Positions 2,836 to 60,900 of a stretch of 64,000 bases of DNA are shown here, piece after piece. The notes under the pieces are model-generated. The model searched no databases. It was not told the DNA's origin and was given only the letters and a program-made list of their open reading frames with translations. This DNA comes from Gekko japonicus (taxonomy: Eukaryota): positions 124,001-188,000 of the forward strand of contig NW_015168689.1 of NCBI RefSeq assembly GCF_001447785.1, given 5' to 3'. Positions within the stretch are counted from its first letter, which is position 1. Each line of letters begins with the position of its first letter. Made by a program: the position numbers and the translations under genes.

Positions 2836-4149
2836 ACAATAGACTCCTGTGATGGACAAGCCTTAAAACAGGCTTCAAAATGCAGCACCGAGTACCGGGA
2901 GGTGAAGAGTTAAATTTCCTCAAGAATGGAGAGCTTTGAGTGAGAGGCTACTCCAAGCACTCTGATTGGACAGCTCTAGCTAAGGGCAGAATTTTTTATT
3001 AGCTGGGTGCTGAGGGGGGAATTGGCACTCAAACAGATTCCTGATTTGAGAGAAGAGAGATGATTCTGTACCTTAACTGTTGGAAATCTTCTCTGAGGAA
3101 GAATTCAGTGGAAGAACTAAAAAAGCCTGAGACTCAGCCTATGCTGAAAGCAGTTTTACACAGACACAAGAATTGGGAATGAGATTTGGCAAGGTTGTTG
3201 TAGTGAGACGAGATTCCCATTCAGGCCAAAAGAAAGGGGATATATCTTCTAGGGAAATAAGAAGAATCCCTGCCCAACTAAACAGGTAGAGTTATCTCTG
3301 GGAGGAGGAGATCCCTGGTCTGCTGTGGAAGGAAACTGCTTGAAACACCTCAAGAGCTAGATAGATATTAGTGAATAAAAGGAAAGGAGTTAGGTGCTGA
3401 AAGAAGGTACCAGCCTCAAGGAAATAAGGGGAGAAATGGGAAACTCTACAAGTGGGGACCCGCAAGAAACTTGCGGGAGTGGCTATCCCATTCCCCCCAA
3501 CCTGTGCTTCTTCCCCTCTCTCCCTACTTCTCTCACCTCTTTCTCCTTCCTTCCACCTCTTTTCTTACCCACTCTCTCTCCCCTCCATGCCTGTCACTTC
3601 CTTTCTGCCCCACCCCATCACTCTTACTGTCCCTGTCATCCTCTCAACCTCCCATCTACTTCCTCTTGTTGGAAAACTGGTAAAAATAGCTAAATATTCA
3701 AAGTTTGCAATGGATCTTTTTCACTGGAGAGGAGGCATTTTCTTTCTATGTAAAAATCTTCATTTCTAAAGGGAAGGATACACAGGAAATTCTACAAAAC
3801 AACAAACACTTAAGAGTACATGCTTGCAACAACAGACACACCAAATAATAATGGAGATTCTTCCTTTCTTCTTGACCTCTAGAAGGAAATTACCTGAATG
3901 CATTAACCAATGATTGTTAGTAAATAGGCTTCAGTTTCCCCGCTTTCTTTCCATTGGCTTTCTGCCAGGTTCCCTTCCAGGTCAGTCTAAACAATAGCAC
4001 ACAAAGTAAGCACATTAACCCTATAATGACTAAATTTTAGACCTTGCAACACACATATTTCCAACACCTCTCCCCCCCACAGCAGCAGTGGCAGAAGCTG
4101 CTCTCCAGGAACCACAACGGATTGCTGAAATACAGAGATCAGTTCCTCT

Positions 4150-4512
4150 TAGGGTTGCCAGCTCCATATTGGGAAATTCCTGGAGATTTGGGGGTGAAGC
4201 CTTGGGAGAATGAGGTTTGAGCTTGGAAGTGGCCTCAGCAGGGTATAATACTATAAACTCCATCCTTCAAAGCAGCCATTTTCTCTGGGGGAACTGATCT
4301 CTGTCCTCTGGAGATCAGTTCTAATTCCAGGAGATCTCCCACCCTCACCTGGAGGTTGGCAACATTACTTCCCCTGGAGGAAATGACTGCTTTGGAGGGT
4401 GTAGTCTATGGCATTATATCTGTCTGAAGTCCCTCCACACTTCAATCCCCAATATCCTCAGGCTCTACTCCTCAAATATCCAGGAATTTCCCAACCCGGA
4501 GTTGGCATCCCT
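4150..4512. mobile_element. Two adjacent ~200-bp hAT-type MITE copies (TAGGGTTGCCA...TGGCAACCCTA family) inside Helitron copy A
   Basis: Terminal inverted motif agggttgcca/tggcaac. The body recurs at about 6570, 11320, 17390, 23605, 36520, 43200, 43900 and 55895. Confidence 0.7.
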
Positions 4513-4614
4513 ATCTCCTTCCCACCCAACAGCCAACCTACCTTTATCTGCCCCTCTGTCTTTAGCTTTCCATCTTCTTTCCCCCTGCAGCTTCAACTGA
4601 GGAAAACTACGATC

Positions 4615-4812
4615 TTTCTACACAGTAGGGACTAAAGCAGTTTACATTATTCTCCCCTCCTTTTTATCCACACAAGCACCCTATGAAGTAAGTTAAGCTG
4701 AAAGTATGTGACTGATCCAAAATCACCTAGTGAGCTTCCACAGCAGGATGGGGATCTCAACCTGGGTCTTGCAAACCCTACTCTGAAGCTCTGACCATTA
4801 TACTACACTGAC
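4615..4812 (-). mobile_element. tRNA-derived SINE inside Helitron copy A
   Basis: Reverse complement gives a tRNA-like head plus the aacctacctcacagggttgttgt-type core also seen at 14340-14570, 23420-23600 and 43510-43735. Confidence 0.7.
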
Positions 4813-4879
4813 CTTTACAGGGTGGCTGCTGTTGAACAGTAGCAAACAGCCAGGCCTAGGTTTGCCAGCCTCCTTGAGG

Positions 4880-6543
4880 CAGTTTCATTGACTTACCTGG
4901 TAATGGCAATGACCCAGCCCACAGTTGTGGGTTGGCTGCAGATAGAAAATGCTTTCTCTCCAGTTAACTCCCTAGCTGATTTTTTGTGGAATGATAAGAG
5001 GCACAGAAATGTAATGAAATTTTCTTCTCCATGTCTAGACAACATGATTGCAATATGGGATAAAAGATGGAAAAAGATATCTCCAGGGAGATCTTTACTA
5101 TCTTCGATTCAGAACCAGAAATGGCTCCCTCCTGAAAATTCATTGTCGGCAAGTTGCACCTGGAAATCAACTAGAAACCTACGTTTACTAGATCTACTTG
5201 ATAATGGACTACTGAAATTAAAACAGAATGTAGAGGAACTCTTGCAACAGCCTCTTTTGTGGTGGCAGTATCATCGAATTAGACATCTGACACTGTTAAA
5301 GAGTCAATCTCAAGGCCTCTCACGGACTTTGAAATTTTGCTCAAAAATATACCCGAACATACATCTTGTCTACTTTTTAGATTATACAATATCCTTTTAC
5401 GATCAGAAATGCTGAAAGCTTATTCCTACCAACAGCTTTGGCAGATAGACTGTCAACAGCAAATCTCGGAGGAGGATTGGCCAGGTATATGGGAGGCAGT
5501 GTGTTTCAAATCAAATATATATTCTCTTAAATACCAATATATTAAGTTACTGACAAGATGGTATTTACCGCCTACAAGAACGCATCACATCAATAAAAAT
5601 AATTCTCCCGGGTGTTCAAAGGGATGTGGTTGTGTAGCACATTTTCTCCACTGTTGGTGGACTTGTGAACAGGTACAAAACTTCTGGAGAGGTATCCTCT
5701 TACACATCAAGAATATCACAGGAAGGTCTTCCACTTCTGCCAGAGGTTTTGCTATTATATTATTGGAAAATGCCATATGGGAAACTGAAACGCGACCAAT
5801 TGACCTCAACTCTAATTTCAGCAGCTAGAACATTGTTAGCCTCAAAATAGAAAGATCAGAAAATGCTGACAATAGATCAATGGCTCCGAAAGTTGTGGCA
5901 CTTTTATATTTTAGGTAAACTTATGAATAATACACAACTGAGTAGATCAGATCAACAGAAACTAGCATACACTGAATTGTGGTCTCCTTTTATTCATTAT
6001 TTGATGGAAAAGGACATTGTAGTGTATTCTGAAGCTGCCAGGAATACCTAAGATGTAATGTGAAACATCTCATAAGGAAGCAATGTTAAGCTTCGTCTTG
6101 AACAGGGATTGAAGTTCAAGACTAATGCGTCCAATCAGGTTCAAAGGTATATAAGCGGGAAAGACTCTGATTGGTCCTTATTCGCTCAACCTGATAGGTT
6201 GATAACTGTATAGTAGGAGTGGCTACATTAGCCCGGAATGTTTAAATACCGAGCAGCTGCAATGGAATAGCTGTTCGGGCTATCAGAAGTTGTATCGTGT
6301 TAGAGAAGTGATCGTCGAGCTGAAATAAACCTGAGTTTTGCTGAAATCACTCTCTGACTAATTTGTTAAGCATCGGACTTAACAGACATTATACCAAATG
6401 ATGATAATTATGTGGACTTGAAATGAATATAAGCAGAGCTTTTTGTTTTGATGGTCAATCAGGGCTTATTCATCTTAACCTCATGGCCTTATTTGCTTCA
6501 TTTATAGTTTTAATATATTTGATGTGATATAATTTTTTAAAAA
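4880..6543 (+). mobile_element. 5'-truncated L1-clade LINE (ORF2 C-terminus and 3'UTR)
   Basis: Frameshifted ORFs with KLLTRWYLPP...CSKGCG...FLHCWWTC..VQNFW (L1 Cys-rich domain). AT-rich 3'UTR with an A-rich end near 6540. Confidence 0.85.
6084..6384 (+). mobile_element. Solo LTR inserted in the L1 3'UTR
   Basis: Perfect 7-bp inverted termini TGTTAAG...CTTAACA, CCAAT and TATA-like boxes, AATAAA at 6324-6329, CpG-rich. No TSD match. Confidence 0.7.
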
Positions 6544-7204
6544 AGTCACCCAAAGGGTGCTGCTAAGCCTTGGTTTGCCAGCCTCCAGGTGGGACCTGGA
6601 GATCCCCCAGAATTACAGCTGACATCCAGACTGCAGAGATCTATCCCCCTGGAGAAAATGGGTGGACTCTGTAGCATTCTATCCAGGTGAGGCCTCTCCC
6701 CTCCCCAAACTCTGCACTCCTCAGACTTACTCACAGAATCTCCAGGAATATCCCAACCTGGAGCGGGCAATTCTAGTCCCAGGCTTGGCTCCAAAATACG
6801 CCTGGAAAGTGCCCTGCCCCCTACCCCTGCCTTTTTAATGCAACCCTCCTGCTATATAGCCATTCATACTGCAGGAAGAATCCTCCCCATCCCAGCTCCA
6901 GTTTTGCTTTTGCTTCCTGTCCTCTTCTTCCACTCATAATCTCTCTCTGTCTCTCTAGCTATCAGCCAATCTATCTCTCATGGTCGATGCTGTGGGGCCT
7001 GGAGTAGATCCCTGCAACAGCTATTTCAAAAAGTATGGTTGGGGGGGATTCAACCCTCCCCGAGTTTTTTTTAATGTTTTTGATTTTTCTGCAAACCCAC
7101 GAAGCTCCCTGAGTCTGTAGAAAAATCTGTTGGGGGAGAGTGTACCCTCTGCGAAAATAAGTATCCACACACAGAGGGGACTGTTGAGAGTTAGATATAT
7201 AAAT

Positions 7205-11637: not shown

Positions 11638-12032
11638 CAGGGCTCTTTTTGTAGAAAAAGCCCAGCAGGAACTCATTAGCATAATAGGCCACACCCAACA
11701 TCAGAAACTCATTAGCATATTGGGCCACACCCCTGACAGCACAGCTCATTAGCACATTAGGCCGCACCCCCATGTTACCAGAAGTGTGGTTATCCAGCCA
11801 CACCCACCTTTTGCTTGTTATTCTGTTTTGCTTGTTTGTTGTCAAAACCCGGGGCTTTTTTGTAGCAGGAACTCCTTTGCATGTTAGGCCACACACCCCT
11901 AATGTAGCCAATCCTAATGAGTTCCTGCTGTTGGGTGTGGCCTATTATGCTAATGAGTTCCTTCTGGGTGTGGCCAACTTGGGAGCCAGCTGGAACTCCA
12001 TTCCTGTGCGTTCCTGCCCAAAAATAGCCCTG
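11638..12032. mobile_element. hAT MITE fragments (CAGGGCTTTTTTGTAG family) with ATGCTAATGAG subterminal repeats
   Basis: TIR-like cagggctctttttgtag...aaaatagccctg and repeated ctcattagcat. Related to 32125-32257. Confidence 0.7.
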
Positions 12033-21226: not shown

Positions 21227-23379
21227 ACCACCACCCATTTCTGAGGCAGACAGGGAACTTAAGATCTAAGTGTGATGACATGAAATTTGGGCCGGACAGC
21301 ACAGAAAGAAAACCCTTGTTCCCTTCAGCCCAGATAGGAAAGAATGGCTGGAAGGTGCACGATGTGACAATCTAGTTGAAAACAAACAGTCTGAGTCTGG
21401 TCAGTGCCGGGATGGAGGACCACCTGGGAACTCTGTAAACACTGCCGGGTGTTTCATGTTGCAAAAGGTGGGGGAGGGGTAGAAATGTGATAACTGGTTC
21501 TTCCTTGTTTCATTTAAGCCAGGCACTATTTCAGTGCCTACTGCACTGTATCAGTGCAATGCTTAAGTAATGAGATGTTTAAGTAATGCAAGCCAATTAA
21601 AGAAAGGAGGATATACAGTTTCTGATGTTGCTGTTTCTCTGGTGTTAGCATGTGCAACCGTCCTTCCATTGAAACAAAGGTCCTTAGATTCATGCATATA
21701 ATTGACTCACCTACCAAAGGAACAAGAGTGCTGGTCAATGCTGCTTCTGTCAGACAGGGAAGGAGCATGAAGTAGAGGGAATTCAAAAGATGGCTTTAAG
21801 TTCTGGTCTTTCCTGCTGCTATTCTATTGTGGGTATGCAAACCACAAAAGAGTATTGTATGTTTCAGAGAACTGCAGGTTTATAGTCACAAGGACATCTA
21901 AAAAAACCAACACTACATTTATTGTGACTAGTGCACAAGAGGCTAGTTGCTTGCTCTCTGTAACCCCACTAAAAACAAAGAGAGCTTGCCATACTTTAAA
22001 TGACAGCCTCATTAAAACTAAAGGAACATAACTGCTAAGATAAAGATCAGAGAATCTGGGGGGGGTAGGGTTTGAATAAATCCACCACAAACATTTTGAA
22101 ACACATATTTTTCCAATTAATATGATTTGGAGTGCCACACCGACATGTTGCTCTAATTAGACAATTGTACTGTTCAAAAATAAATACTGACATTTGTCAG
22201 GCGTGCCGCATTTGGTCGGTGGATGAAATGTTCCTGTGCTTTGCATTTCATTTGGATATCTGTTTCTCCTTTAAAAAAAATCCTGCTTCAGTTCCCCAAA
22301 ACTGGACTTACAGAGTCATAGCTAACTGATTCTATATTGTTTTGTTTTGCATCATTGAGAGCATCCAGGTAATCTACTTTTTCCAACCTTCCCTTCCCTT
22401 ATTTCCTTCAGACAGGCAACCATCAAAATGTAAAGGAAAAACCCTTTTGAGGGAAGAGAAACCTACTTCTTCCATGGTGGTCAGAAAAAAATGCAATGTA
22501 GATATACACCAACTGGTACACTTAGGCTTGCCAACTCACCCACTGTGACAGCAGATCTCTTGCCACTGCCCCAGACCCCTGCTGCTGCTGCTGAAATAAG
22601 CTGTATGTGGGGGAGGATGTTGTATAAATGTTGGCATCACTGCTGGCTCCAGTCCTGAAGTAACATTACTGGCGCTCTAGAATTTCACAGATCTCTGTAG
22701 TTTATCATAGATACTGGCGAAATTCTAGAATGTCAGTGATGTTGATGCGTGCATGATGTCTGTAGGACTGGAACAGAGATTCTCACCCGGGGGATCTACA
22801 ACAAACCTTTTTGGAACTAAAATATCCACTTGATTAAGTCAAGAAACAGATTAACGAAGCCAGATTCTTTCTCAAGAAGTGCTTTAACAATTCCTTGTAT
22901 AAATTATTTTCTGGAACCGATCTCCATCCTTATAACAACATGTGCACTTTTCCCATGGAAAAGCTGGAAACGGCTTGTACATCCAGGGAGCCATCAGATC
23001 GCTTCTCCTGCAGTGACAGGATTGTGGATCGCTTCTCTCACAAGTAGCAAGTTCTGGAAGAAGAATACTTTTGGATTATTCATTTGCAGTAGCAGGACAC
23101 GTAGAAAAGAGAATCCCTGCACTATTTATTTCCAGTGATATTGTCTCTTGTTTATGTATGAACTTTGTGGTGCATCAGAATTTATGAATTTATTTCCACA
23201 TTGTATACATTTTGACTACATTTGCTTATTATTAGGATTATTATATTTAAAATATTAAGATATATATTATATACATTCTTTATAGTTTATTAAGAACATT
23301 TACTTTCTTATTTTTAGATTTTTGTACACTGTTTTCTTTGTTTGGATATGTTCCACCGTGGTCCCTATTTTTGTCTCAC

Positions 23380-24184
23380 CTGGAGATTGGCAGCAATGGT
23401 CTCCTTGGAGGAAAAGGGCAGTCTTTCTCTGCAATGGGGACCAAAGCAGCTTACATCATTCTCCTCTCCCCCTTTTGACTTGCACAACGACCCTGTGAGG
23501 TAGGTTAGACTGAAAGTCTGTGACTGGTCCAAAATCACCCACTCAACTTCCACAGCAAGAACCTGGGTCTAGCAGACCCTGCTCTGAACTGCTAACTGCT
23601 ATGCCTAGGGTAGCCAACCTCCAGGTGGAGCCTGAAGATCACCGGGTATCAAAACTGAACTCCAGACAACAGATCTCTCCCCCCCAGGAGAAAATAACTG
23701 CTTTGGAGGGTGGGCTCTATGGCATTCTATTCAGCTGAGGCCACTCCCCTCCCCAAAATCTGACTTCCTTAGATTCCACCACAGAATATCCAGGAATTTC
23801 CCAGCCTGGAGCTGACAACCCTAATCAGGACTGGCTCCAATGAGTTCCCCACAAACACCTGGAAAGGGCTTCCTTCCTTTGCCTTTTTACTGACAGAACC
23901 AAGCTTGGTTGCCTAGCAACAGCCACTGAGGGAAAAGTTAGTCTCACAGGAGCCAAGCAGCAGAAGTGTCCATCAGGAGAGACAGCCGTTTTGATAGTTT
24001 GTTCTGTGAGGGAAGAGTGTCCAGGCTGGCAATGGGCGGGGATGAGGAGCGGACTCTGCACTCAGCCAATGGCATGCGTGTACTCTTGAGTGGTGGTTGA
24101 TGGGCCAATGGCTGATGGAGTGCACTGCACAGCCAATGGGAGAGCTGGAAATGGCCAATACATAAGGGAATTATATATATAGGA
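23380..24184 (-). mobile_element. Non-autonomous Helitron-like element, copy C (3' truncated)
   Basis: Minus-strand start A|TCCTATATATATAA at 24184. 23830-23925 aligns inverted to 43083-43197. The same MITE and SINE cargo follows. Confidence 0.65.
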
Positions 24185-24465: not shown

Positions 24466-25871
24466 TTTTTAAAGAACACTGAAATGAGTGAGGAGAAGCT
24501 TCACAGATCTGAGACCCTCCCTTTACTTTCCTCAAAAGCCCAGGCTCACACACATTGTAGAAGGCAGAATTCTCTGTGCCTTCTGCAGAGCACTGGGTTT
24601 CTCTCCCTCCCTGAAGGAACAAAAATGTTGAATGAGCAAATAAGTGAATGTAACATTGTCACCAGACTGAATAAATGATAAGAGCCAATTTCCACAGCTA
24701 ACAAGTAGCACTTCTTCATTTCAGGTTTCTCAAAATCTTCAAAGAGATGTATTAGCTGCTCCTGTAACTTCTTTGTTCTCTTCTGAGAAAACAATTATGG
24801 CCCAATTTCTTCTTGTTTAGGTTGTGTGCCTTGATTAGAGCCATGCAATCTTGCTTTCACACAAGGGATATAATTTTGTGTGGGACAAGCATTCAGCCAT
24901 CCATCTCTGAATTACAACAAATTGCTCAATTTTGGCTTTGTAGTTATGGGCATTCAATATACCTGCTCTTTTCCCTTTTTTTGCCCTGACATATGCGTTA
25001 GTGCTCTTACTAATGAATGCCATTTTAATGCCTGGAGCCTGAAGAAAAAAAATGTTTTGATCTGGTATCCCTCACTTAGCTAAGGAGTACAGGCTGAGAA
25101 ACTAAAGGCCTAAAATGAGATGTAAACTCTCCTATTTGCTGTGTAATACCACTGGAATAAAATAAAAAAATCAGAAGATTCATATTTCTCTGTGGATGTT
25201 CAGTTCTCAAATAAAGACAATGTGACTCTTTGGTAAGGGAATGAAAACTCACAGTAGTTTAAACTGGAGGTGGGAAGAAGGATGCTGTAATTGTTTTGGG
25301 TCCCCACTGGGGAGGAAAGTCAAGTACAAACATCTAGATAAATAAACACATTCTGGTCTTGTAATGGCTATGTTATAATAATAATCATATGCAGTAATCA
25401 CATATGGTATACTTGGTCTCCTTAAGAGTAATGTGCAAGAGGAATTTGACAAACCCAACTTGTCATGCAAGACTCCACATAAGAAATATTGCACCAGGTG
25501 GAATTCCTAATTCTGCAGAATGGAAGATTGTTCTATTGCTAAGTCTAAAGTTCTTTTTAGTAAAAAAAACCCCAACAACCCAAGATAAAGAAGTATAAGT
25601 GTTCGGTGGCAGGTCAACCTATGTAGCAAGTACAGCATTTTAAATATTTAGGAATCACCTTTCAAGCAAATCTTTCCCGGAAATTATGCTTGAATTCTGC
25701 CTTTAGAGCCTCTATGAGTACTGGGAAGGCCATCTCAAGATTTTATTATTCTACGGGTGGCCAATATGTTTCTGTGGCAGTCAAAGTATTCAACGCTAAA
25801 GTTGCTGGGCAGATGCTATATGCCGCCAGGGTCTGGATCAGTGCAGTAACAGACAATATTGACAGGCCTCT

Positions 25872-26158
25872 TGTTATGTATTGGGATTGAATCATCCCTG
25901 ATTGAATCACCCCAGAGACTGGCTGAGCTTGGAGCACAAGAACAATAGCCTGCCAGGATTCTGAAAGTAACCCATCTAGTAGTAATGTTATGTAAATAGC
26001 CTATCACTGGGAGTGGGGTGTGTTTGGGTGTGGCAATTGCATGCTATTTAACAGAGCTGAGGCTCTGGAGTCTTGTCTTGCTGTTTCTGAAATAACAATT
26101 AAAGTTGAGCTGATCACTAGACTCGAATCTGCTCATCCATGGAACCCACTATTTAACA
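25872..26158 (+). mobile_element. Solo LTR, 287 bp, 5-bp TSD
   Basis: TGTTA...TAACA termini. TSD CCTCT at 25867-25871 and 26159-26163. Absent from LINE copy 1. Confidence 0.9.
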
Positions 26159-26565
26159 CCTCTATTAAGATTCCTACACAATATTCTAGGAGCACCTCAG
26201 TGTGTGTCTGGAATAGCCCTGAGAGCTGAAGTTGGGGAGATGTCTTATGAAGCAAAGGGCTGGGGAAGAGCATTCAATTTGAAAATTAGGACTCTAAAAT
26301 CAAACCCAGATCTAAACCTCCTTGGACTAGTCAAGCTGGACCACCACACAAGTGATTGGGACAGATTACTGGACCGTAGACTATTATGGCTGGGTATCAC
26401 CCATGACATGATAGAAGTCACGAGTAGACAAGAACTGTCACAGCTCATTAGAAGACGTTTGAGAGACTTTGACTTCGAGAGTACATCGATCAGAGCTGGC
26501 AGAGTGTGCTCAACCTTTTCAGTAGGCATTCAGCCTTCAACAACCATGTCAAACTACTTATCTAA

Positions 26566-27001
26566 GGCTCCGGTCACACAAGAGTTTTTGGGCCGGGAGA
26601 GGGACGGATCGGGGCCACAGCAAACGGGCGCGATCCCACCGCAACATCTGGGAAGCGTTGCATGCCCGTTCCCGATCCGGCCCTTCCGCCCAAAACCCCA
26701 CAGCAAAAATGAACCACCTACTATGGTGGTTCGTCCGGGAAGGCCGCATCAAAGCCGGCCGTGGGATCGTCGGCGCGTCCTTCCGCCGGCGCATCCCCGG
26801 CACCTAGCCAAACTGCACATGCTCACACATGCGCAGTTCGGCAGGCTCCCCGTCAGGGCCGTGTTTTCTCCCCGGGATCCCGCCGCGCCGTTTCAACTTT
26901 GGTGCGGCTTTTAAAAGCCACGCTTTTTGGCGGCTTTTCCCCTGCCGTGTGGCACGTGCGCGCACTTTGGCCGGTGTTTTTCCTGCTGTGTGGCAGAGAC
27001 C
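26566..27001. mobile_element. CpG-rich PIF/Harbinger-type MITE
   Basis: Imperfect TIRs GGCTCCGGTCACACA/TGTGTGGCAGAGACC. 3-bp flanks TAA and TGA where LINE copy 1 has a single TGA. Confidence 0.8.
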
Positions 27002-27286
27002 TGAGATAATAATTCCAAATATAGAAGGGCATTCATGCTAGCATGCCTGAATGCCCTACCTTCAGCTGTGATGTCAGGAAGATTTAATGAGATTTCATAT
27101 TCAGATTGACTCTGTGGTTCATATTTTGCTTGATTGTCCCAAATGTTCAGCTCTAAGAAATGCGCTGATCTCTCCTTTATTTAATCAGGACTTCCTCTCT
27201 CCAGAAGCAAAATCATCCTGGTTATCATCTCCCCAGAAGCAAAATGATCCTGGACACAAACTACTCTGCCTGTGGCAAAATTTCTA

Positions 27287-28016
27287 AAGACAACAATGGA
27301 CAACGGAGTCAAAGAGCTGCTGTGATCAATGAAAAAACTCCAAAAATGGGCTGCCTGCCAAAGACTCCCAAACGTTATGAAAGTTATACCAATAACAATT
27401 ACCCACTGAAACTTCTATTGAAAATAATAGGAGAACTTTCCATCTTTGAATGTTATCAGGCTGTGCCAAATTGACTGTAGAGTATATGTTCCTTGTTCAT
27501 GGATATATAAGCTTCATATCCTGGACGTGAGACCAGAAGGTTATCACCCAGGCCACTTCTGTGGGAGGTTTGAAAAGATTTGCTCATGGTTTCATTCAAT
27601 ACAGAATTATTGTTCTGTAATAGCAACTGAGGAAGAACGTTTAAGGAAACAAGGGAAGTAAACTGGGACCTTGTATCACTGTTACTTGCTTCTTTACTCT
27701 TCATTGTTGATGTTATTTATCCTCATTGTGATTGTTATGTCTTCATGTAATTACTCTGTATGTGTTTATAGGATGTTCTAGCTATTTCTTTATTTGATTG
27801 TTTAACTACATCCTTTTGGATTAGTTGGCAACTGGTATCTTGTAACTTGTGAATTTATTAGTATTGATGTTATTATTGACTAAAGTATTGTACAGCCTGA
27901 TAACATTCAAAGATGGAAAATTCTCCTATTATTTTCAATAGAAGTTTCAGTTGGTAATTTTTATTGGTATAACTTTCATAACGTTTGAGAGTCTTTGGCA
28001 GGCAGCCCATTTTTGT
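27287..28016 (+). mobile_element. Truncated Penelope-like element with inverted duplication and 16-bp TSD
   Basis: TSD TGTGGCAAAATTTCTA at 27271-27286 and 28017-28032. RLCQ...WIYKL..L...P.G resembles the end of the GIY-YIG domain. Hammerhead core at 27617-27685. Inverted arms at 27341-27466 and 27890-28015. Confidence 0.75.
27617..27685 (+). ncRNA. Type I hammerhead ribozyme motif (degenerate)
   Basis: Stem I gtaatag/ctgttac, CUGAGGA at 27627-27633, GAAA at 27646-27649, stem III ACAAGG/CCTTGT, GUA cleavage triplet at 27673-27675. Stem II pairs poorly. Confidence 0.65.
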
Positions 28017-36200: not shown

Positions 36201-37301
36201 CCGCAAACAGCCCATGTGAGAGAAGGGAGGGGGGAATGACCGGGGCAAGGGGATTGCATGGGGGAAGCCCCATGCAGAAGCTCTACTGCTACTGGGAGTG
36301 CCTCTGCAGCAGCAAGGAGAACAAAATGGGGAATCACCCCATGTGGAAGCTTCCAGCAGTCTGCTGCCCACTGCCTTGACACTGCTGAGATCATAACTCT
36401 GGCTCTCCTGTCCTGTCACATGACCAATGCCACATACTTGCAGGTTAGTGGGTCCTATGATGTCACAGCGGCTAAAGGTGCTTCTCAGGTTTGTTGAGAT
36501 TAAAGACCAGTATCAAGAGCTGCTAATTCTAGGTTGGGAAATTCCCGGAGATTTGGTGGAAGAGCCTGGGGACTGGAGGGCTGCATGGGGAGGTGAGGGA
36601 GCTAAGCAGGTCTGTGAGGCCATTGGGTCTCCTCTCCAAAGCTATCATTTTCTCCAGGGAACAGATCTCTGTAGTGTGGACAGTTGTAATTCTGGGAGAA
36701 CTTCAGGTCCCACCTAGAGGTTGGCAGTATTCCAGCAGCCCATCTTCCAGCCTTATCACACTAAGCATTTCCTTGCTCTTCACTACAGAATTGGCTGCCA
36801 TTGTGGGAGCAGAGGAGCACAACTACACAATGTTACCAAGATACAGGATGAATTGCAGGAGAGGCGGTGGGAAACTTGATACAGATCTGCCCTTTTCAGA
36901 TGTCCTTCCCTGAGATTTTCAACAAAGGCAAACCTAATCAGATGTTGTTTCCCTAAAGGATTTTGCAGTTGGACTTCTACACTGTAAGTGGAAGAAAAAC
37001 GTGGTGTAAATAATTGCAAGAAACGTAACCTAGGGTCATGCTTAGTGCCAACTGCACAGGTGCAAAAGCAGGGTGTGCAGTCTGACTCAGATGCTTTAAA
37101 AAGAGACATCCCACAATGCCCTAGGTCAGAGTGATCAGGCACGTCTAATTAGACATGACCCAGCCAATATACCAAATCCTGCCACTGCATAGATAAAGAA
37201 CTGCTTGCAATGTTTCTTGCAAACAAGTCTGTAAGTGATCCCAAAAGAGGCTTGTCGTGACAAAAAAGGACATGTTGAAAAAAGTAACTCTGAATATTGG
37301 T

Positions 37302-38558: not shown

Positions 38559-40527
38559 TGAAATATACTGGGTTCAGACGTGTAGAGTGATTAGCTCATG
38601 TTTATTAAGTGGTTTCAGCTCCAAAACTAAGACAAACTTGCAGGGTCAGAGCCCTGCTTATATTCATGAAACACCCCACACCCAGCACACACCCCACACC
38701 CCACAATAGGCCATTTACAGAGTATTGTTTACCAATTCGCTACTACTAGGATCCGGATCTATCTATTGGCTCATTCTAGGATCCAAGCCTTCTATTGTGA
38801 TGCGCTCCAAGCTATGCTATTTTGCATGTTTGCTTGCAAGCCCTTTCACAAGTACGGTTCCGTCGCAATACAGAACACCCCTCCCCCCAAGGTTTAGACA
38901 CTCTCAGCAGATTTAAAGTCTTTTAAATAAGCGGGGCGGCACTGCTTGCGGGATGAGCGGCGTGGCTCTGCTGGTGGGGTCGAGGGTTCACGGGCCGCGT
39001 CGGCGGTCAGTCCCACCGAGGAATTGGGGACCAGAGGTGGTGTTGGCACCAAGTCAGGGCCCTCAGCAATGGCTGGCTCTGGCAGAACGTTCCGCTGGCT
39101 GTCTCTGATGGCTGTTCCCTGGCGGCCAGCTGCTCACTTCTAGTAGGCGAGTTCTCCATGGGTTCCGGTGTTCCAAGACTTGGTAGGTCCTCTTCACTGT
39201 CCTCTGGCTGGGACGCAGTTGACCTGGGTTCAGCAGGGAGGAGGTGGCTGCAGAGCTGGTCGATGTGCCAACGGAGCAGCTGTCCTTCTTCCGTGGCAAC
39301 TTCATAAGATTAAAACATATGCACCCGAGCTATAATTCGATATGCTTGAAAGGATGTGGTGGTCCTGTTCCGAGATACAATCTTTCTGGGTACAGATACT
39401 GGAGGAAACCAATAAAATAACAGGCCAAAACATCCCGTTAGAGCTGGCTATTATATTATTAAACTGGTGCAGGGCACTTGAGTGGGTCACTCCGGCGGTG
39501 GCAGAATGCCATGAGTCACAGTGAGCTGGGCGACAGACCTGGTGCACTTCATCTGCATCTGAGACGTTGGAGACCGGGGAGGCTGAGGCCTGATGTGTGG
39601 TGTGGCCCCAGCGGTCGCGTTGAGATTTTTCAAAAGCTGTGGCCTCTTGCATTGCTTTTTCTAGAGTCAGCTCCACGTGGCTGATGAGCTTACGGCGGAG
39701 CTTCTGTTCCCTGATGCCCGCAACAAATTGGTTAAGGAGGGCGTCTCCTAGGTCATGGAATACACAGTGGATGGCCAGCCTGCGGAGTTTGACCATGAGG
39801 TCGGTGGCTGTTTCTTTGGACTTCTGGCGCACAAAGAAGTCCATGCACCTCGCCATCTTGGTTGGTTGAGGTGTGAAATGGTTGGTGAGTGCCTTGACCA
39901 ACTTATCGTAGGTGGCCTCATCCAAGGTCTTGTGTGCGATGAGGCTCTGGATGAGGCATAAGGTGGCGATGCCACAGGCGCTGTGCAGGAGCGACTTCTT
40001 TTTGTCGGCATCAGCGATGTCCTGGAACCTGATGAAGAATTTTAGGCACTCCACCCAGGTTTCCCATAGCTCGGGGTGAGCAGAGTCGAACTCAGGAAGA
40101 TGTCCCAGAGCAGCAGCCATGACCCTGGAAGCGATGTGAGGAATGAAGGGCTGGGGTTTGTTGTGCGGGGGTTTGTTGCGCGGTGCGGTGCTGGTGCCGG
40201 AGGTCAGGTCAGGCTCGCTCATCGGGATCCCACCTTCGTTGCCAGTGAAATATACTGGGTTAAGACATGTAGAGTGATTAGCTCATGTTTATTAAGTGGT
40301 TTCAGCTCCAAAACTAAGACAAACATGCAGGGTCAGTGCCCTGCTTATATTCATGAAACACCCCACACCCAGCACACACCCCACACCCCACAATAGGCTA
40401 TTTACAGAGTATTGTTTACCAATTCGCTACTACTAGGATCCGGATCTATCTATTGGCTCATTCTAAGATCCAAGCCTTCTATTGTGATGTACTCCAAGCT
40501 ACGCTATTTCGCATGTTCGCTTGCAAG
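38559..40527 (-). mobile_element. Internally deleted Gypsy LTR retrotransposon (LTR-PBS-gag-[L1 piece]-IN tail-PPT-LTR)
   Basis: Direct repeats at 38559-38877 and 40246-40527. PBS TGGCAACGAAGG next to 40245. PPT at 38878-38890. gag ORF (LPEFD..ELWETWVE..L.NHF.PQP..QFVAGI). Integrase tail GQLLRWHIDQL near 39250-39290. Confidence 0.93.
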
Positions 40528-40678
40528 TGTTTCCAAAATTTCAGCTGAGCAGGGATCTTTTGGGGCTGGAGCACGCCAGAGTGCTGCTCTGGCAGCTCAG
40601 GAGCTTGCGCTAATGGGGGTGACAGCGAGCCCCACCCCTAGCTCCCCGTGCCGAAAGCGCTGTGCTTCGGGGGAGGCT

Positions 40679-41285
40679 GGAGAGCCCTGCCGCCACATCT
40701 CCCGGGCCTACACAGGAGCACTGCGGCTTGGGGGACACCGGAGAGCCCCGTCGCCGCATCCCCTGGGCCTGTGCAGGAGCGCTGCGGCTTGGACACCAGG
40801 AAAGCCCCCTCTCCACATTCCCCAGGCCTGCGCAGGAGCATTGCGGCTCAGGGGAGGCCAGAGAACCCTACCGCTACATCTCCTGGGCCTGCACGGGAGC
40901 ACTGCAGCTCAAGGGACACCGGAGAGCCCCGTTGCCGCATCCCCCGGGCCTACGCAGGAGCGTTGCAGCTTGGGGGACGCCAGGAGAGCCCCCTCTCTGC
41001 ATCCCCCGGGCCTGCGCAGGAGCATTGCGGCTCAGAGGAGGCCAGAGAACCCTGCCGCCACATCCCCCGGGCCCGCACAGGAGCACGGCAGCTCGGGGGA
41101 GACCGGAGAGCCCTGCCACATTCCCCAGGCCTGCGCAAGAGCACTGCAGCTCAGGGGAGGCTGGGCCGCATCTCCTGGGCTCGGGGGACGCCAGGAGAGC
41201 CCCGTCCCTGTGTTCCCCAGGCCCGCGCAGGAGTGCTGTGGCTCAGGGGACACCAGGAGAGCCCCGCCATTGGCTTCCCCGGCCC
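40679..41285 (+). repeat. GC-rich ~61-bp minisatellite, about 10 units
   Basis: Unit ggagagccc...ggcctgcgcaggagcactgcggctc.gggga starts near 40679, 40740, 40799, 40860, 40921, 40983, 41045, 41105, 41194 and 41256. Confidence 0.9.
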
Positions 41286-41628: not shown

Positions 41629-42967
41629 TGGCCCAACTCTAGTGAGAAGAGGGTTAAACTTTAAACCCCTTCTCTCTTTGCTCCCCCCCAGGCCAGCTGA
41701 GGAAGGGAAGGGGTGGCTTTTGAAGATGCCTCCCCCCTTTTGCTTCCCCTTCTGACATCACTTCCGGTTATGTCAGGGGGCATGGCATATGCTAATAGCC
41801 TAGTAGCTCATTAGCATATCATATGCTAATGAACTCCTGCAGCTCTTTTTCTACTAAAAGACCCCTGCAGCTGAGTATTGCTTGAGTTGGATCTTGATTG
41901 GTACATTTCTGACTAAACATCTCTATGATGCACAGTTTCCATTTTGAATAAAAGCCAGCTTGATTAGGCATTCAGAGCAAGTCAGTTGCACCAATCCATA
42001 CTGCCCTTTGGGTGTATGTAATGCTATTTGTCTCTGGAAATGTGAGACATTGATTTTTTCCCCTATCTTACTCCCCTTCCCCATATAGGACTACAAACAG
42101 CTTTCTCCTATGGGCTTGTTCTTAATTTAAGGAAAGCCAGGATCCACCCTCAATAATCTTTACCATTGTGACTGTGATTCTGCTCCTCACTCCATATTTT
42201 AATCACTGCACTTCTTTTTTGTATTCTTACATCTTCTTCCCCGAGAGTAGTCTGCAGAGAATCTGACATGCATAGACTAAACACATAAATAATTTCAATT
42301 CCACAAGGGGGGGGGGAGCATTTGAGGCTGTGCATTTCTCAGGTGGATTAAATCAATCAGATCTAAACTGCAGAATTGTTACAAACCTGAAACAAATGCT
42401 TGGAAAGTGATACAAGAGAATTAAGCATTGTTAGTATTATTACTATTGATTAAACAATTGCCTGGCTTTCCTTTGCTTTGGCATCCTGTTGCTTTGAAAA
42501 AGGCAATATAACTTTGAAAGCAGTAATACAATTCATTATTTGTCCATCTTCTCAATGATCCTCAAAGGTTTTCTAGGGAACTTGAAGTGCAGGAAAACAT
42601 ATAAATTGGATACCAAGAAAGTACTTGAGATGAAACAGAGGGCTTTCCCCAAGAGTACTGGGCAAAGTAAGGGTCAGATAAATTCTGTCTTAGCTTTGTT
42701 TACTGTGCCTTCCACAAATATTCTCGGATGCTCCTAAGTCAGGACATACAGATATTCCCCTTTTTCTTTTATTCACCTATGCCTCCTTGTGAGCCTTTTC
42801 ATTTCACCCATTTCCATCGTTAGTGTTTCTGATTTGCACATCCCTTTTGTGCCATTTTTAAACCATTTATATGCCACTTACTTATCTTATATTCTAATAG
42901 CAAAGTCCAGATATCTTTGGATACTTAAATCTGGTGACTAGAGCTGTGAACAGGCAAGACAGATCAT

Positions 42968-44307
42968 TCTATAAACTTGTAAAGGGCCCCAGGTTTGCAG
43001 AAAAATGTGAAAACTAAAAAATATATACTGGACAGCTTTAAAAAAAATCCAAAAATGATAAATGGAGCCCTTGCAGCTTTAAGGCAGTTGCTAGGCAACC
43101 ACAGCATTCCAATCCTGGCTCTGTCAGTAAAAGGCAAGGGGAGATCTTTTTCCAGCCCTATTTTGGGCTTTGATGGAGAACTCATTGGGGCCAGGCCTGC
43201 TAGGGTTGCCACTTCCATGTTGGGAAATTCCTGGAGATTTTGTGATGAAGTCTGAGGCGGGCAGGGTTTAGGGAGGGCAGAGGCCTCAGCATCGTATAAG
43301 GCCACAGAGTCCACCCTCCAAAGTAGCCATTTTCTCCAAGGGGAACAATGTCTGGAGTTCAGTTGTAATTCTGGGGGATCTCCCCAACTGGAGGTTGGTA
43401 ACCCTGGGCCTGGCAGCACCTTCTGGGTGACTTGATGCCACCTGACTTGTATGACTCAAGTAGACCTGGCTGCTTGCTACTGTTCAACAGCAGCCACCCC
43501 ATGAAAGCCAGTGAGGTGCTGCAGTTAAAGCTTCAGATTATGCTCTGTGCAACCCAGGTTCAGATCTCCATCTTGCTGTGGAAGCTGACTGGGTGATTTT
43601 GGACCATTCACATACTTTCAGCCTTACCTACCTCACAGGGTTGTTGTGTGGATAAAAAGAAGGAAAAGAGAATAATGTGAGCTGCTTTGGTCCCCACTGT
43701 GGATAAAGGTGGGGTATAAATGAAGTGAATAAAGAATAAACATAGCTGAAGATGGGAGGCAGATAAAAGGTAGGTTGGTGAATGGCTGAGAAGGAGAGAA
43801 TGAGGCAGGGAGAGGATATAGGGATTGCTAAGAGGAGGGAAAGTGGTTAGGAAATTCCTAGAAATTGGAGGGGAGCTGGGAGGTGGGAGGTTGAGGAGGG
43901 GAAGGATTGCAGGTGGGGCTTGGAGATCATCAGGAATTACAACTGATCTCCAGCTGACAGACATCAATTCCCCTGGAGAAAATGGCTGCTCTGGAGAGTG
44001 GACTCTATAGCATTATACCCTGCTGAGATTGCTTTCCTTCCCAAACCTTGCCCTCTAAAGACTCCGCCCCCAAATCACCAAGATTTTCCCAACCTAGAGC
44101 TGGCAACTCTAAGTAGTAACTGATCTTTGTAGTTGGAAGATCTGTTGTGATCCCAGGAGATCTCTAGGCCCCACCCAAAGGTTTGTAACCCTATAAGGAG
44201 AGAAAGAAACAGGAAAAGGATAGGGGACTTTCAGGAAAGTGAAAGAGGAAATAGTGGGGGAAGGGGAAATGAGATGCTTCCCACAAATAATTGCAGGTTC
44301 CTGCTTG
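42968..44307 (+). mobile_element. Non-autonomous Helitron-like element, copy B (apparently complete)
   Basis: 5' TCTATAAAC..TAAAGGG. 3' CpG-decayed hairpin cccacaa/ttgcagg, then CTTG|T at 44304-44308. Contains a MITE (43201-43406), a SINE (43510-43735) and further MITEs (43900-44195). Confidence 0.7.
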
Positions 44308-45586
44308 TATATAATTAATGCAAAAATCACGTTAGACATTGTATATGTTTAACAGGAAACATTAGGTAAAAGAAAAATTCTACCCACCCCCCCGATTTGA
44401 TTCACGCAGAGAAAATAAAGCAGGAATTTTGTGAGTCAAAACAGTGAAGTGTGAAATTTGGGAGCATTCCTCATCACAAGTGAATTAGCTTGAAGGGGGC
44501 CACATACATTTTGGGCACCACATAGCAATATGGCAGGTACTGTTTCGTTTTCTACAACAGAAGTATGGGAAGCAGGACAAAACATACCTCTGTGAAGTGG
44601 CTTTGCTTTCTTTGAAAGCCCTGCAGTTAGCTCCCATTGGAGCTGATGGAAGGACTAGTGATATGTATGGGGGCAGGGGTTGCAGATATATTTCCATTAG
44701 TTTCAGATGACAGGCAGGTGAGGCTATTGGTTTATATACCTTAATCAGACTAATGAAGGGCTGGCATGCAGCTACACTTGTTGAATCAGATCTTGTCATT
44801 TGTCTGTGTAGTATATCTATGCTGTATACATGTGACCATCAACTTTTTAGGCTCAAGTTCTAACATGGGATCCTCTTTTAATTTTTTAATCGCATAATAT
44901 TTACCCTTACTGTGGCCAGAATTTAAAAGTCTATGAAGCTCCCCTTTATCCCCACAACCCCTCTGAAATATCACTCCTGAAGACTGTGAAACCATGGGGC
45001 AGCATTTGATGTGCAAGGGACTTCAAGTGCTCTTGGAATAATCATGGTGATTTCTGGTTCCTAGCCTGTATCTGTGTGCGCAGATCTGCCTTTTTATTTA
45101 CTCCTTCATGCCCATCTCCATTCTTCTCTTTCTGTCTTTCACATATGAACAGAGGTGAAGTGACCTTATGCTGAAACAGACCATCAGTCCTTCAAGGTCA
45201 GTGTTGTCTACTCAGACCAGCAGCAGCTCTTCAGGGTCTCAGTGGAGGTCTTTCACATCACCTGATTCTTTTACCTGGAGGTGCACAATTGAATCTGGGA
45301 CCTTCTGCATGCAAAGCAGAGGCTCTTCCACTGAGCCACAGACCCTTTCTCCTTCTCCCTCCTTTTCTCTTTTTGCTCTCCAGAAGATGTTTGCATTACC
45401 ATCAGTGCAACCCACATTAGAGTAGTCACAACCAAATGAAAAATAATGGTGTGGATGTTATTGTGCCATATGAAAGCACATTCCCTCTCCCCCATCCCAT
45501 TTGAAATGCAGTCTCATGATATTGTACTGCATATATGTGAATATTCCTAAGCCTTTGGACTGTCCCACAGTCTCCAGCTCATGGAA

Positions 45587-59800: not shown

Positions 59801-60900
59801 ACTCCCCTTGTTGCTCTTCTCATCCTCTTCTCCTGTTGGATCCAATTGTTGCTGCAGAAACTCTTTTGCTTTCAAAGCAGAGTCAATTTTCCCCTCTTAT
59901 CTTTAAATCTGAAGAGTAGGCCTTCGGGTACGATCCATTTGTAGGATATGTTGTTCTTTTGTAGAAACAAAGCCAAGTCTCTGTATTTTTTTCAATTTTT
60001 TCCTTTTTTCAAAGGGAATGTCTTTCAAAACTCTTATCTCCTTGCCATCAATTTGAAGGGTAGTTCCATCTGTTGCTTTTAATATCTGATCTCTCACTTG
60101 TCTTCTGGAGAATCTCACCACCACCTCGTCGGGCAGATTATTTTTCTTTATATATTCTGAATATGACCTATAGATCACATCCATTTCGCCTTGAAGAAAA
60201 TCCGCTTTAAAATCTGCAACTGGTCCCAAAGCATCAATCAAAATCTGTTTAAGATTCTTCCCTTTGGTCTCAGGAACCCCCTGAAATCTCAGTATAAAGC
60301 TTTCCTTTTCTATTTGTAGCTGTAGGAGCTGGGCTTCATCAGAATTTTTCTTCTTTTTCATATCTTGCATTTGTTTTTTAAGCTTTTTAGTGTTGGCATC
60401 CACTTCTTTCAAATTCTCAGCTGTTTGCTCTGTTTTTTTAATTCTCATCCAGTTGCTGTTGCTGTGCAGCAACATTTTAATTGAGTGTCTTCATTTGCTC
60501 CAGCAGGGGTCGCAATGCTTCTGTCAGCATCTCAGAGAAGTCTATGGTTGTTTCCGGTCGCGTGACCACACTCGCTAGGCTAGCACTTCCTGAAGGAAGC
60601 TTAGCTTTTGTTTGCTTATCTTTCTCCATCTTCTTCAGCGACATCTTTGAAGCTGTTTACTTTTTACAAAGTTTGCCAAAAGTCTCTAGTCTGCAAATTG
60701 CCTGTAATTTTCTTGTAAGTTTCTTACTATAGTCCCATTTTGCTCCCTTCACAAAGGCTCCGGGGGGGCACTCACTCTGACAAGACTGACAAGACATTTA
60801 AAAACTCTTCTCAGCTGGCACTGACCAATGAGAGAGAAGGGGGTGTATGCAGGCAGGCAGGTAGTTCGCTCCGGGGCAAACTGTGTTTTACAGTCAGGCA
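56820..60900 (-). mobile_element. L1 LINE 5' half (5'UTR, ORF1, ORF2 endonuclease/linker), decayed
   Basis: ORF1 at 59903-60475 (coiled coil, LRFQGVPE, VVVRFS...RDQIL, IRVLKDIP). ORF2 VNGL near 59135, YSRIDF, WRFNTILL, WDVLKPVVRG. Ends before the RT. Confidence 0.88.
57841..58767 (+). mobile_element. L2-type LINE derivative lacking RT, inserted in the L1
   Basis: LDLIFAA, APWYTQEL, FFADKV and PTCSLDLCPSWLIK, then a jump near 58670 to the tail tgtaagccaccctgagcc...(aaat)n. Confidence 0.8.

What the first reader, a model, noticed from the sequence alone, without database searches (positions are those of the whole stretch)
42968..44307. Helitron-like composite vehicle carrying a SINE and hAT MITEs (three copies in 64 kb)
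Seen in sequence: what look like independent SINE and MITE insertions share the same unique spacers in the same order at three loci (3449-7203 minus, 23380-24184 minus, 42968-44307 plus). Shared spacers include ggctgctgttgaacagtagcaa (~4824 vs ~43475 inverted), ccaacctacctttatctgcc (~4533 vs ~43757 inverted), aagtcaccca.a.ggtgctgc (6543 vs ~43413 inverted) and ggtttgcagaaaaat (42992 vs ~7084 inverted). The units start with TC(C)TATA-type sequence and end with an 8-bp GC hairpin ~10 nt before CTTG|T, with no TSD. Established: a 5' TC, a subterminal hairpin, a CTRR-like end and no TSD mark Helitrons, which capture host DNA. Inference: a rolling-circle family amplified other TE classes as cargo, so standard masking would fragment it and overcount SINE/MITE activity. 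CTTG departs from canonical CTRR.
Basis: partly seen in the sequence, partly recalled or inferred. Interest (0 to 1): 0.78.

Follow-up and report, generated by a model that had tools for sequence, protein, structure and literature searches.

The report
Old composite Helitron-like lizard repeat
Two decayed full copies and one fragment of a non-coding mobile element sit in this lizard-type window; it is built mostly from pieces of other repeats, its ends look like those of a rolling-circle transposon, and this kind of element is already known in lizards.

Summary
The shared order of MITE-like and SINE-like pieces and "unique spacers" is real. It holds fully for two loci, not three. L1 (7195 to 3449, minus strand) and L3 (42893-44307, plus strand) are collinear at about 67-80% identity. 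Their outer flanks are unrelated.

Homology starts at TTATAT(A)|TCTAA. It ends at a subterminal hairpin followed by CTTG|TA. L2 (23930 to 23375) is only an internal fragment and has neither end.

MITE copies group by their position in the composite, so the pieces were already joined before copying. That fits nested insertion into a progenitor better than "capture".

The ends suggest a non-autonomous Helitron: 5' TC, an 8-bp GC-rich hairpin 6 nt before CTTG, no terminal inverted repeats, an AT-rich target. But CTTG is not CTRR. One junction is T|T with TATAT on both sides. No RepHel gene is in the window.

I could not get copies from outside the window. With two full copies, one old duplication is not excluded.

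The scan has flagged the same kind of composite on other DNA of this genome. Lizard Helitrons carrying SINE fragments are in print (Anolis Helitron-2N3). Ordinary; low interest.

The parts
42893..44307 (+). L3: full copy of the composite element (1415 bp), from TC to CTTG
   Evidence: The limits of homology with L1 are set. The outer flanks are not alike (163 of 500 and 391 of 500 shuffles as good).
42893..43082 (+). L3 5' backbone. It holds the shared 10-mer (42918) and the decayed arms of a 5' subterminal inverted repeat (about 42962-43007, including the shared 15-mer at 42992).
   Evidence: The fold of the L3 version is not better than shuffles (z +0.4).
43083..43200 (+). Backbone stretch next to the first MITE. 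It is shared with L2 (23930-23826) and partly with L1.
   Evidence: E 2.7e-9 against L2.
43201..43405 (+). Family A MITE-like copy, 'rev' orientation, with TAGGG...CCCTA-type ends
43406..43506 (+). Spacer 1, shared with L1 on both sides of L1's private insert
   Evidence: 43452-43516 vs 4867-4803, E 2.9e-9; 43396-43433 vs 6580-6543, E 0.007.
43507..43741 (+). Family B SINE-like piece with box A- and box B-like motifs. The label is not confirmed by any tool.
   Evidence: ARAGORN found 0 genes on the L1 copy's head. Rfam found 0 matches.
43742..43892 (+). Spacer 2 plus a degenerate partial family A piece
   Evidence: 43735-43912 vs 4576-4424, E 3.9e-4.
43893..44111 (-). Family A MITE-like copy, 'fwd' orientation (inverted relative to 43201-43405)
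44118..44195 (+). About 75 nt end fragment of a further family A copy
   Evidence: seven family A matches, E 3e-7 to 4e-4.
44196..44307 (+). Purine-rich tail, decayed terminal hairpin (about 44279-44298) and CTTG (44304-44307)
3449..7195 (-). L1: full copy (3747 bp), with extra private sequence at about 6870-7060 and 3500-4100
4898..6542 (-). Private ~1.65 kb insert in L1, absent from L3 and of unknown nature
   Evidence: no other copy in the window. Pfam gave 0 families for its two ORFs.
3449..3477 (-). L1 3' terminus: an 8-bp stem and 3-nt loop hairpin (3477-3459), 6 nt, then CTTG (3452-3449)
   Evidence: DNA fold -15.1 kcal/mol, z -4.4, 0 of 200 shuffles as good.
7082..7129 (-). L1 5' subterminal inverted repeat (~15-nt arms), about 65-110 nt from the 5' end
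   Evidence: E 0.0013; z -2.9, 1 of 200 shuffles as good.
23375..23930 (-). L2: internal fragment of the composite. It holds backbone stretch + A(rev) + a 5'-deleted SINE-like piece + the first ~25 nt of A(fwd), and has neither terminus.
   Evidence: Its flanks match nothing else in the window.

Best explanation
L1 and L3 are two old, decayed copies of one non-autonomous, non-coding element that most likely moved by the Helitron (rolling-circle) route. L2 is a truncated or deleted remnant of a third copy. The progenitor was a short backbone: a 5' end beginning TC with a subterminal inverted repeat, and a 3' purine-rich tail with a GC-rich hairpin and CTTG. A hAT-type MITE (several times, in both orientations) and a SINE-like retroposon had inserted into that backbone. 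The whole mosaic was then copied as one unit by a RepHel enzyme supplied in trans, into AT-rich sites. Afterwards the copies diverged by about 12-19% each, and L1 took up further private insertions.

Shown: the collinearity, the common limits of homology, the hairpin, and the lack of TIRs. Inferred: the rolling-circle mechanism, the trans-acting enzyme, and the order of nested insertion followed by amplification.
For: Collinear homology over five blocks plus both ends.

Homology stops at both ends. The outer flanks are no better than shuffles (163 of 500 and 391 of 500), and the masked self-comparison shows no other L1-L3 flank similarity.

The left limit in both copies is TTATAT(A) followed by TCTAA. 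The right limit in both is ...CTTG followed by TA.

L1 has a perfect 8-bp hairpin ending 6 nt before CTTG (z -4.4). Only about 20 distinct 8-bp hairpins occur in the 64 kb (29 overlapping entries), and 8 entries have 5 or more G/C. One within 20 nt of a given point is therefore expected well under 1 time in 100.

L3's hairpin differs from L1's at three arm positions by G/A changes (the L1 G follows a C at two of them), and by one C/A change.

There are no TIRs (391 of 500 and 339 of 500 shuffles as good).

Family A copies group by position in the composite: Arev of L1, L2 and L3 at 64/92; Afwd of L1 and L3 at 55/90; 0 of 200 label shuffles need as few changes.

L1 and L2 share a replacement of the SINE-like tail that L3 lacks. 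That suggests subfamilies, and so more than one round of copying.

Precedent: Anolis Helitron-2N3 contains Poseidon and SINE fragments (PMC3014272). Bat Helitrons amplified nested retrogenes (PMC4224331).

Leads only, not tested here: earlier notes on other DNA of this genome describe the same MITE-SINE composites and CTTG-ended Helitron-like families, said to be in thousands of copies.
Against: Only two copies carry the ends, so shared limits are also what one duplication would give.

CTTG is not CTRR.

The L3 junction is T|T, not A|T, and has TATAT on both sides, which could be read as a 5-bp duplication.

The exact 5' limit is uncertain by about 6 nt, because TTATAT before the TC is also shared.

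The ends are less alike (first 30 nt: 20 of 33 columns; last 30 nt: 21 of 31) than the interior (72-80%). Both are below the 80% family rule quoted in PMC4224331.

No RepHel domain was found in 19 of the 21 ORFs of 130 aa or more that I scanned. The 2 across an N gap were not scanned.

No further copy of either end exists in the window.

No outside copies could be obtained.
Confidence: 0.6

Rival explanations
1. Local segmental duplication. A repeat-rich patch, formed by MITEs and a SINE nesting into one another, was duplicated once or twice within this 40-kb neighbourhood by a non-transposon process. The TC, hairpin and CTTG at the limits are coincidence.
For: All three loci lie within 41 kb. 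Only two carry both limits, and any single duplication gives two copies with identical limits. L2 has different limits. No copy from elsewhere could be obtained.
Against: A perfect 8-bp GC-rich hairpin 6 nt from the exact limit is rare by chance. Both limits lie in AT-rich sequence, with TC at the start. The copies are inverted and dispersed with unrelated flanks. L1 and L2 share a derived change that L3 lacks, which implies at least two events. Unchecked notes from other pieces of the genome report like composites.
Confidence: 0.2
2. The element is mobile but of another class. It could be a TIR-less element of an unrecognised or tyrosine-recombinase type, or these could be fragments of a longer element whose true ends lie elsewhere. 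It could also be a Helitron2/Helentron-like variant that inserts between T and T.
For: CTTG is not CTRR. L3 sits at T|T with TATAT on both sides. L1 has a 5' subterminal inverted repeat as well as the 3' hairpin. No RepHel was seen.
Against: There are no TIRs, asymmetric or otherwise, between the first and last 60 nt. Homology ends at both limits. Nothing in the window codes for another transposase associated with it.
Confidence: 0.12
3. Independent insertions. The MITE and the SINE landed next to each other three separate times because of target preference, or the outer MITE pair mobilised the interior as a composite cut-and-paste transposon.
For: Family A is frequent: 10 pieces in 64 kb, 4 of them outside the composites. 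The two main A copies are inverted, like the arms of a composite transposon.
Against: Non-repeat spacers and junctions are shared. Homology extends about 300 nt beyond the outer A copy on the left and about 200 nt on the right. A copies group by position, not at random.
Confidence: 0.04

Closest known systems
Helitron-2N3_AC of Anolis carolinensis (Novick et al. 2010, PMC3014272; passages seen)
   Same: It is a non-autonomous lizard Helitron of about 2 kb with a composite structure containing SINE and Poseidon fragments, amplified as a unit.
   Different: That family is young (about 2% divergence), exceeds 1,000 copies and is derived from a known autonomous Helitron-2_AC. Here the copies differ by about 20-33% and no partner is known. 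The cargo is a hAT-type MITE plus a SINE-like piece, and the end is CTTG. No sequence comparison was possible, because consensus sequences and supplements were not available to me.
Helibat exemplars with nested retrogenes, and chimeric Helitrons (Thomas et al. 2014, PMC4224331; passages seen)
   Same: Retroposed sequence inserted into a Helitron and was then propagated with it. Structures are mosaic, with conserved ends and variable interiors.
   Different: Those have vetted TC...CTRR ends, empty sites and hundreds of copies. None of that could be tested here.
Heli1Xen1 of Xenopus (PMC12001565; passages seen)
   Same: It starts with TC, has a TA-rich left end, and has a CCCG...CGGG-type hairpin in the right end. 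The paper states horizontal transfer to squamates.
   Different: It ends in CTAG and captured coding exons. No sequence similarity was tested.
hAT-type MITE (family A on its own)
   Same: Ends of the YARNG type (TAGGG...; the motif name is recalled, not from a call). An 8-bp flanking repeat matches at 7 of 8 positions in one solo copy.
   Different: The composite is not bounded by these ends, so hAT transposition does not explain the unit.

Membership tests
Helitron (canonical) | 5' terminus TC | tested here: met
   TC (TCTAA) stands at the left limit of L1-L3 homology in 2 of 2 full copies. The limit is uncertain by about 6 nt, because the preceding TTATAT is also shared.
Helitron (canonical) | 3' terminus CTRR | tested here: not met
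   CTTG in 2 of 2 full copies. The pattern was derived from these two copies, so it matches them by construction.
Helitron (canonical) | Short hairpin about 10 nt upstream of the 3' end | tested here: met
   L1 has an 8-bp stem and 3-nt loop ending 6 nt before CTTG (z -4.4, 0 of 200 shuffles as good). L3 has a homologous but decayed version. So it is intact in 1 of 2 copies.
Helitron (canonical) | Insertion between A and T without target duplication | tested here: inconclusive
   L1 is A|T with no duplication beyond TA. L3 is T|T with TATAT on both sides. No empty site is available.
Helitron (canonical) | No terminal inverted repeats | tested here: met
   First 60 nt against the reverse complement of the last 60 nt: 391 of 500 (L3) and 339 of 500 (L1) shuffles score as well.
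Helitron (canonical) | An autonomous RepHel-coding partner with the same ends | not testable with these tools
   None in the window: 0 of the 19 scanned ORFs of 130 aa or more hit Rep or helicase families, and 2 of the 21 were not scanned because they span an N gap. The rest of the genome is out of reach.
Helitron (canonical) | Many dispersed copies sharing the ends; paralogous or orthologous empty sites | not testable with these tools
The protein routes were blank. The metagenome pattern gave 0. Profile searches of the window found only L1 and L3.
One Helitron family in the sense of Yang and Bennetzen (rule quoted in PMC4224331) | [quoted passage not shown] | tested here: not met
   21 of 31 columns (last 30 nt) and 20 of 33 columns (first 30 nt). 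The rule is meant for consensus or young copies, and these are old.
hAT-type MITE (family A) | Short TIRs of YARNG type and an 8-bp target duplication | tested here: inconclusive
   TAGGGTTGCC...GGCAACCCTA ends in the alignment of 8 copies. The 8-bp flanks match 7 of 8 in solo copy 17385-17625 and 5 of 8 in 36516-36730. The third solo copy is truncated (read by eye).
tRNA-derived SINE (family B) | tRNA-like head with pol III boxes, A-rich tail, own target duplication | tested here: inconclusive
   Box A- and box B-like motifs and an A-rich tail (in L3) are seen by eye. ARAGORN found 0. Rfam found 0. There is no free-standing full copy in the window: 3 of the 4 pieces lie in the composites.
Segmental duplication | Homology continuing into unique flanks, or copies confined to one locus | tested here: inconclusive
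   Flank homology is absent. Confinement to this locus could not be tested.

The most novel reading that the evidence does not exclude
These copies belong to a very abundant, old lineage of CTTG-ended, non-canonical Helitron-like elements, specific to this lizard or gecko clade. Its body is almost wholly other transposons, so a sizeable share of what is annotated as SINE and hAT-MITE copies in such genomes was in fact spread by rolling-circle copying. In this window that would be 3 of 4 SINE-like pieces and 6 of 10 MITE-like pieces.
Probability: 0.3. Interest if true: 0.35.

Novelty: new member of a known kind. Interest (0 to 1): 0.18.

Why it matters
The value lies mainly in repeat annotation. 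If the unit is a Helitron-type vehicle, then masking it as separate SINE and MITE hits inflates the apparent copy number and activity of those families and hides a rolling-circle family. In this window 3 of 4 SINE-like and 6 of 10 MITE-like pieces lie inside the composites. The principle is already established: mosaic non-autonomous Helitrons that carry other repeats are known in Anolis, bats, frogs and plants. This case adds an example, not a new mechanism.

Tried and rejected
Reads. So there is no depth profile, no loose ends and no empty-site test.

Paralogous copies by way of spurious ORFs. The 76-aa ORF over the 3' tail had no candidates. The 151-aa ORF over the 5' region plus MITE had 25 word-sharing candidates, none at E <= 0.01. 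The third protein search and the representative search were not spent, because one search showed that even the abundant MITE has no relatives in that collection.

A degenerate 3'-end pattern scanned against metagenome contigs gave 0.

Candidate extra 3' ends were rejected. 12080-12233 (E 0.014) shows no composite context when read. 17643-17661 (2 mismatches) has no CTTG end.

An apparent likeness between L3's upstream flank and L1's downstream flank is chance: 86 of 500 shuffles do as well.

With strict scoring the tails showed no match. Softer scoring restricted to the last 60 nt did show one. A global alignment with free ends failed to align the 5' regions. MAFFT and nhmmer did align them.

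The ESM Atlas search on the L1 insert ORF gave only weak hits (0.84), which I did not use.

Supplements of the cited papers (consensus sequences, tables of ends) were closed. They might hold a lizard Helitron with these ends.

Full report
**What the window is.** The window is 64 kb at about 38-46% G+C, apart from a G+C-rich patch at 38-42 kb. It has two N runs and many decayed interspersed repeats. They include a reverse-transcriptase fragment and a weak L1 ORF1-like match. This is a vertebrate, lizard-type landscape. Earlier notes of this scan call the genome a lizard or gecko. I did not identify the species.

**Checking the observation.** A BLAST of 42700-44600 against the window, of the two other loci, and sensitive pairwise runs show two repeat families.
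- Family A is about 210 bp with TAGGG...CCCTA-type inverted ends. It has 10 pieces in the window, 6 of them inside the three loci.
- Family B is SINE-like. It has 4 pieces, 3 of them inside the three loci.

L3 (plus strand) and L1 (minus strand) are collinear over five blocks at 66.7-79.8% identity. The order is: 5' backbone; A in 'rev' orientation; spacer 1; B; spacer 2; a partial A 'rev'; A 'fwd'; a short further A fragment; tail.

L1 carries a private insert of about 1.65 kb (4898-6542) exactly where L3 has 28 nt. It also has extra sequence at about 6870-7060 and 3500-4100.

**Were the pieces joined before copying?** They were. The junctions and non-repeat spacers are shared. In a maximum-likelihood tree of nine A pieces, the three 'rev' copies of L1, L2 and L3 form one group (support 64/92). 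The two 'fwd' copies of L1 and L3 form another (55/90). None of 200 label shuffles needs as few changes. Individual supports are modest because the rows are only about 220 columns long.

The 'rev' A copy is flanked in all three loci by similar short sequence on both sides (read by eye). That looks like the MITE's own target duplication, inherited by all copies. This argues for ordinary insertion of the MITE into a progenitor, followed by copying of the whole, and against Helitron-style capture of host DNA.

**Where the unit ends.**

Right end: the last ~50 nt of L3 and L1 align up to CTTG-TA (score 15 against a shuffle mean of 6.3 and maximum of 11; 0 of 500 as good). The next 300 nt do not align (391 of 500 shuffles as good).

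Left end: homology does not start at 42968.
- nhmmer aligns 42914-43043 with 7171-7048 (E 4.3e-4; alignment).
- An exact 10-mer is shared at 42918 and 7167.
- The stretch 42886-42967 aligns with 7204-7122 better than 499 of 500 shuffles.
- The 300 nt further out do not align (163 of 500 shuffles as good).

In both copies the limit reads TTATAT(A) followed by TCTAA. This gives L3 = 42893-44307 (1415 bp) and L1 = 7195-3449 (3747 bp), with about 6 nt of uncertainty on the left.

L2 is different. Its homology runs only from 23930 to 23375. It lacks the 5' backbone, spacer 1, the head of B, most of spacer 2, nearly all of A 'fwd' and the tail. Its flanks match nothing else in the window. So L2 is an internal fragment, not a third unit with TC...CTTG ends.

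L1 and L2 share a replacement of the tail of B that L3 lacks. They also pair weakly in the tree (57/79). This hints at subfamilies.

**Anatomy of the ends.**
- L1 has a perfect 8-bp, G+C-rich hairpin with a 3-nt loop, then 6 nt, then CTTG. As DNA it folds at -15.1 kcal/mol, z -4.4, with 0 of 200 shuffles as good.
- The window holds 29 overlapping entries of perfect 8-bp hairpins with 3-8 nt loops, about 20 distinct. Of the 29 entries, 8 have at least 5 G/C. One within 20 nt of a given point is expected in well under 1% of cases.
- L3's version aligns with L1's. It differs at three arm positions by G/A changes (the L1 G follows a C at two of them), and by one C/A change. Its own fold is not significant (z -1.9).
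- L1 also has a 5' subterminal inverted repeat at 7082-7129 (E 0.0013, z -2.9). In L3 it is decayed (z +0.4).
- Neither copy has terminal inverted repeats.
- The junctions are A|T for L1, with no duplication beyond TA. For L3 the junction is T|T, with TATAT on both sides.
- Profiles of both ends find no further copy in the window.

**What it most likely is.** The unit has no TIRs, no LTRs and no poly-A end. It starts with TC, has a hairpin just inside its 3' end and sits in AT-rich sites. That fits a non-autonomous Helitron best. I put this at about 0.6, and it stays well short of certain for these reasons:
- With only two full copies, identical limits are also what a single duplication produces.
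- CTTG fails the CTRR criterion.
- One junction breaks the A|T rule.
- The ends (61-68% identity) are less alike than the interior (72-80%).
- None of the 19 ORFs scanned (of the 21 of 130 aa or more) shows a Rep or helicase domain.
- Every route to copies outside the window failed.

Against the duplication rival stand the hairpin at the exact limit, the unrelated flanks, the inverted and dispersed arrangement, and the signs of more than one copying event.

**Earlier findings of the scan.** Notes on other pieces of the same genome describe the same kind of MITE-SINE composite, often 'three copies in 64 kb'. They also describe CTTG-ended Helitron-like families. Three follow-ups called them ordinary lizard Helitrons or a Helitron-like 3' end with thousands of copies. 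I treat these as leads. They agree with my reading and speak against a purely local duplication, but I could not test copy number myself. One of them reports the same cassette inside elements with different ends. My L2, which has the cassette without these ends, is compatible with that, but it is equally explained by truncation.

**Comparison with what is known.**
- Novick et al. 2010 (PMC3014272; passages read) describe six non-autonomous Helitron families in Anolis. [quoted passage not shown]
- Thomas et al. 2014 (PMC4224331; passages read) give the TC, stem-loop and CTRR definition and the 80%/30-nt family rule. They also describe retrogenes that inserted into bat Helitrons and were then amplified with them.
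- The Xenopus study (PMC12001565; passages read) describes TC starts, a TA-rich left end and a CCCG...CGGG hairpin, and reports transfer to squamates.

So a composite, SINE-bearing, non-autonomous Helitron in a lizard is a known kind of thing. What differs here is the age (about 12-19% per copy, from the tree's terminal branches), the hAT-MITE content and the CTTG end. I searched papers four times and found nothing specific to this family. The closed supplements might hold matching consensus sequences.

**Labels.** 'hAT MITE' rests on the end motif and on a 7-of-8 flanking repeat in one solo copy. 'SINE' rests on box-like motifs and an A-rich tail seen by eye and on recall of squamate SINEs. 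ARAGORN and Rfam gave nothing. I worked beside it and left it out of every later search.

**Verdict.** One boundary needs correcting by about 75 nt. The Helitron reading is the best available but unproven. The phenomenon is already known in lizards. Interest is low.

Noticed in passing
window 38559-38840 and 40246-40527, with ORF 39302-40222 (minus): Two 282-bp direct repeats at 96% identity flank a 306-aa ORF. The ORF has a weak PNMA (gag-like) match, E 0.0012, below Pfam's cutoff. It looks like a small LTR-bounded gag-only element or a domesticated gag gene in the G+C-rich patch.
   Followed up: no
window 40664-41268: G+C-rich internal tandem-like repeats at 68-77% identity with offsets of about 120-430 nt, overlapped by long ORFs that have no Pfam match.
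   Followed up: no
window 7834-8785 vs 25551-27286; 27341-27464 vs 27892-28015: Two inverted copies (78-90% identity) of another repeat. One of them abuts the Penelope-like insert that another note places at 27287-28016. That insert has 124-nt inverted arms at 96.8% identity.
   Followed up: no
window 4898-6542: A private ~1.65 kb insert inside L1 with two overlapping ORFs on the plus strand (175 and 163 aa). There is no Pfam match and only weak Atlas hits, and no other copy in the window. It is possibly flanked by a degenerate 8-bp repeat.
   Followed up: partly
window 23931-24184 (minus strand reading): The sequence upstream of the L2 fragment holds four CCATTGG-type motifs within about 120 nt. 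It matches nothing else in the window.
   Followed up: no
window 11660-12060: Another palindromic MITE-like repeat with reiterated short motifs in both orientations, seen when reading.
   Followed up: no
window 854-1288 and 59903-60475: A reverse-transcriptase fragment (RVT_1, E 3.1e-7) and a weak L1 ORF1-like match (E 0.0016, below cutoff).
   Followed up: no
window 61502-61724 vs 61932-62150: A pair of 223-bp direct repeats at 95.5% identity, 430 nt apart.
   Followed up: no
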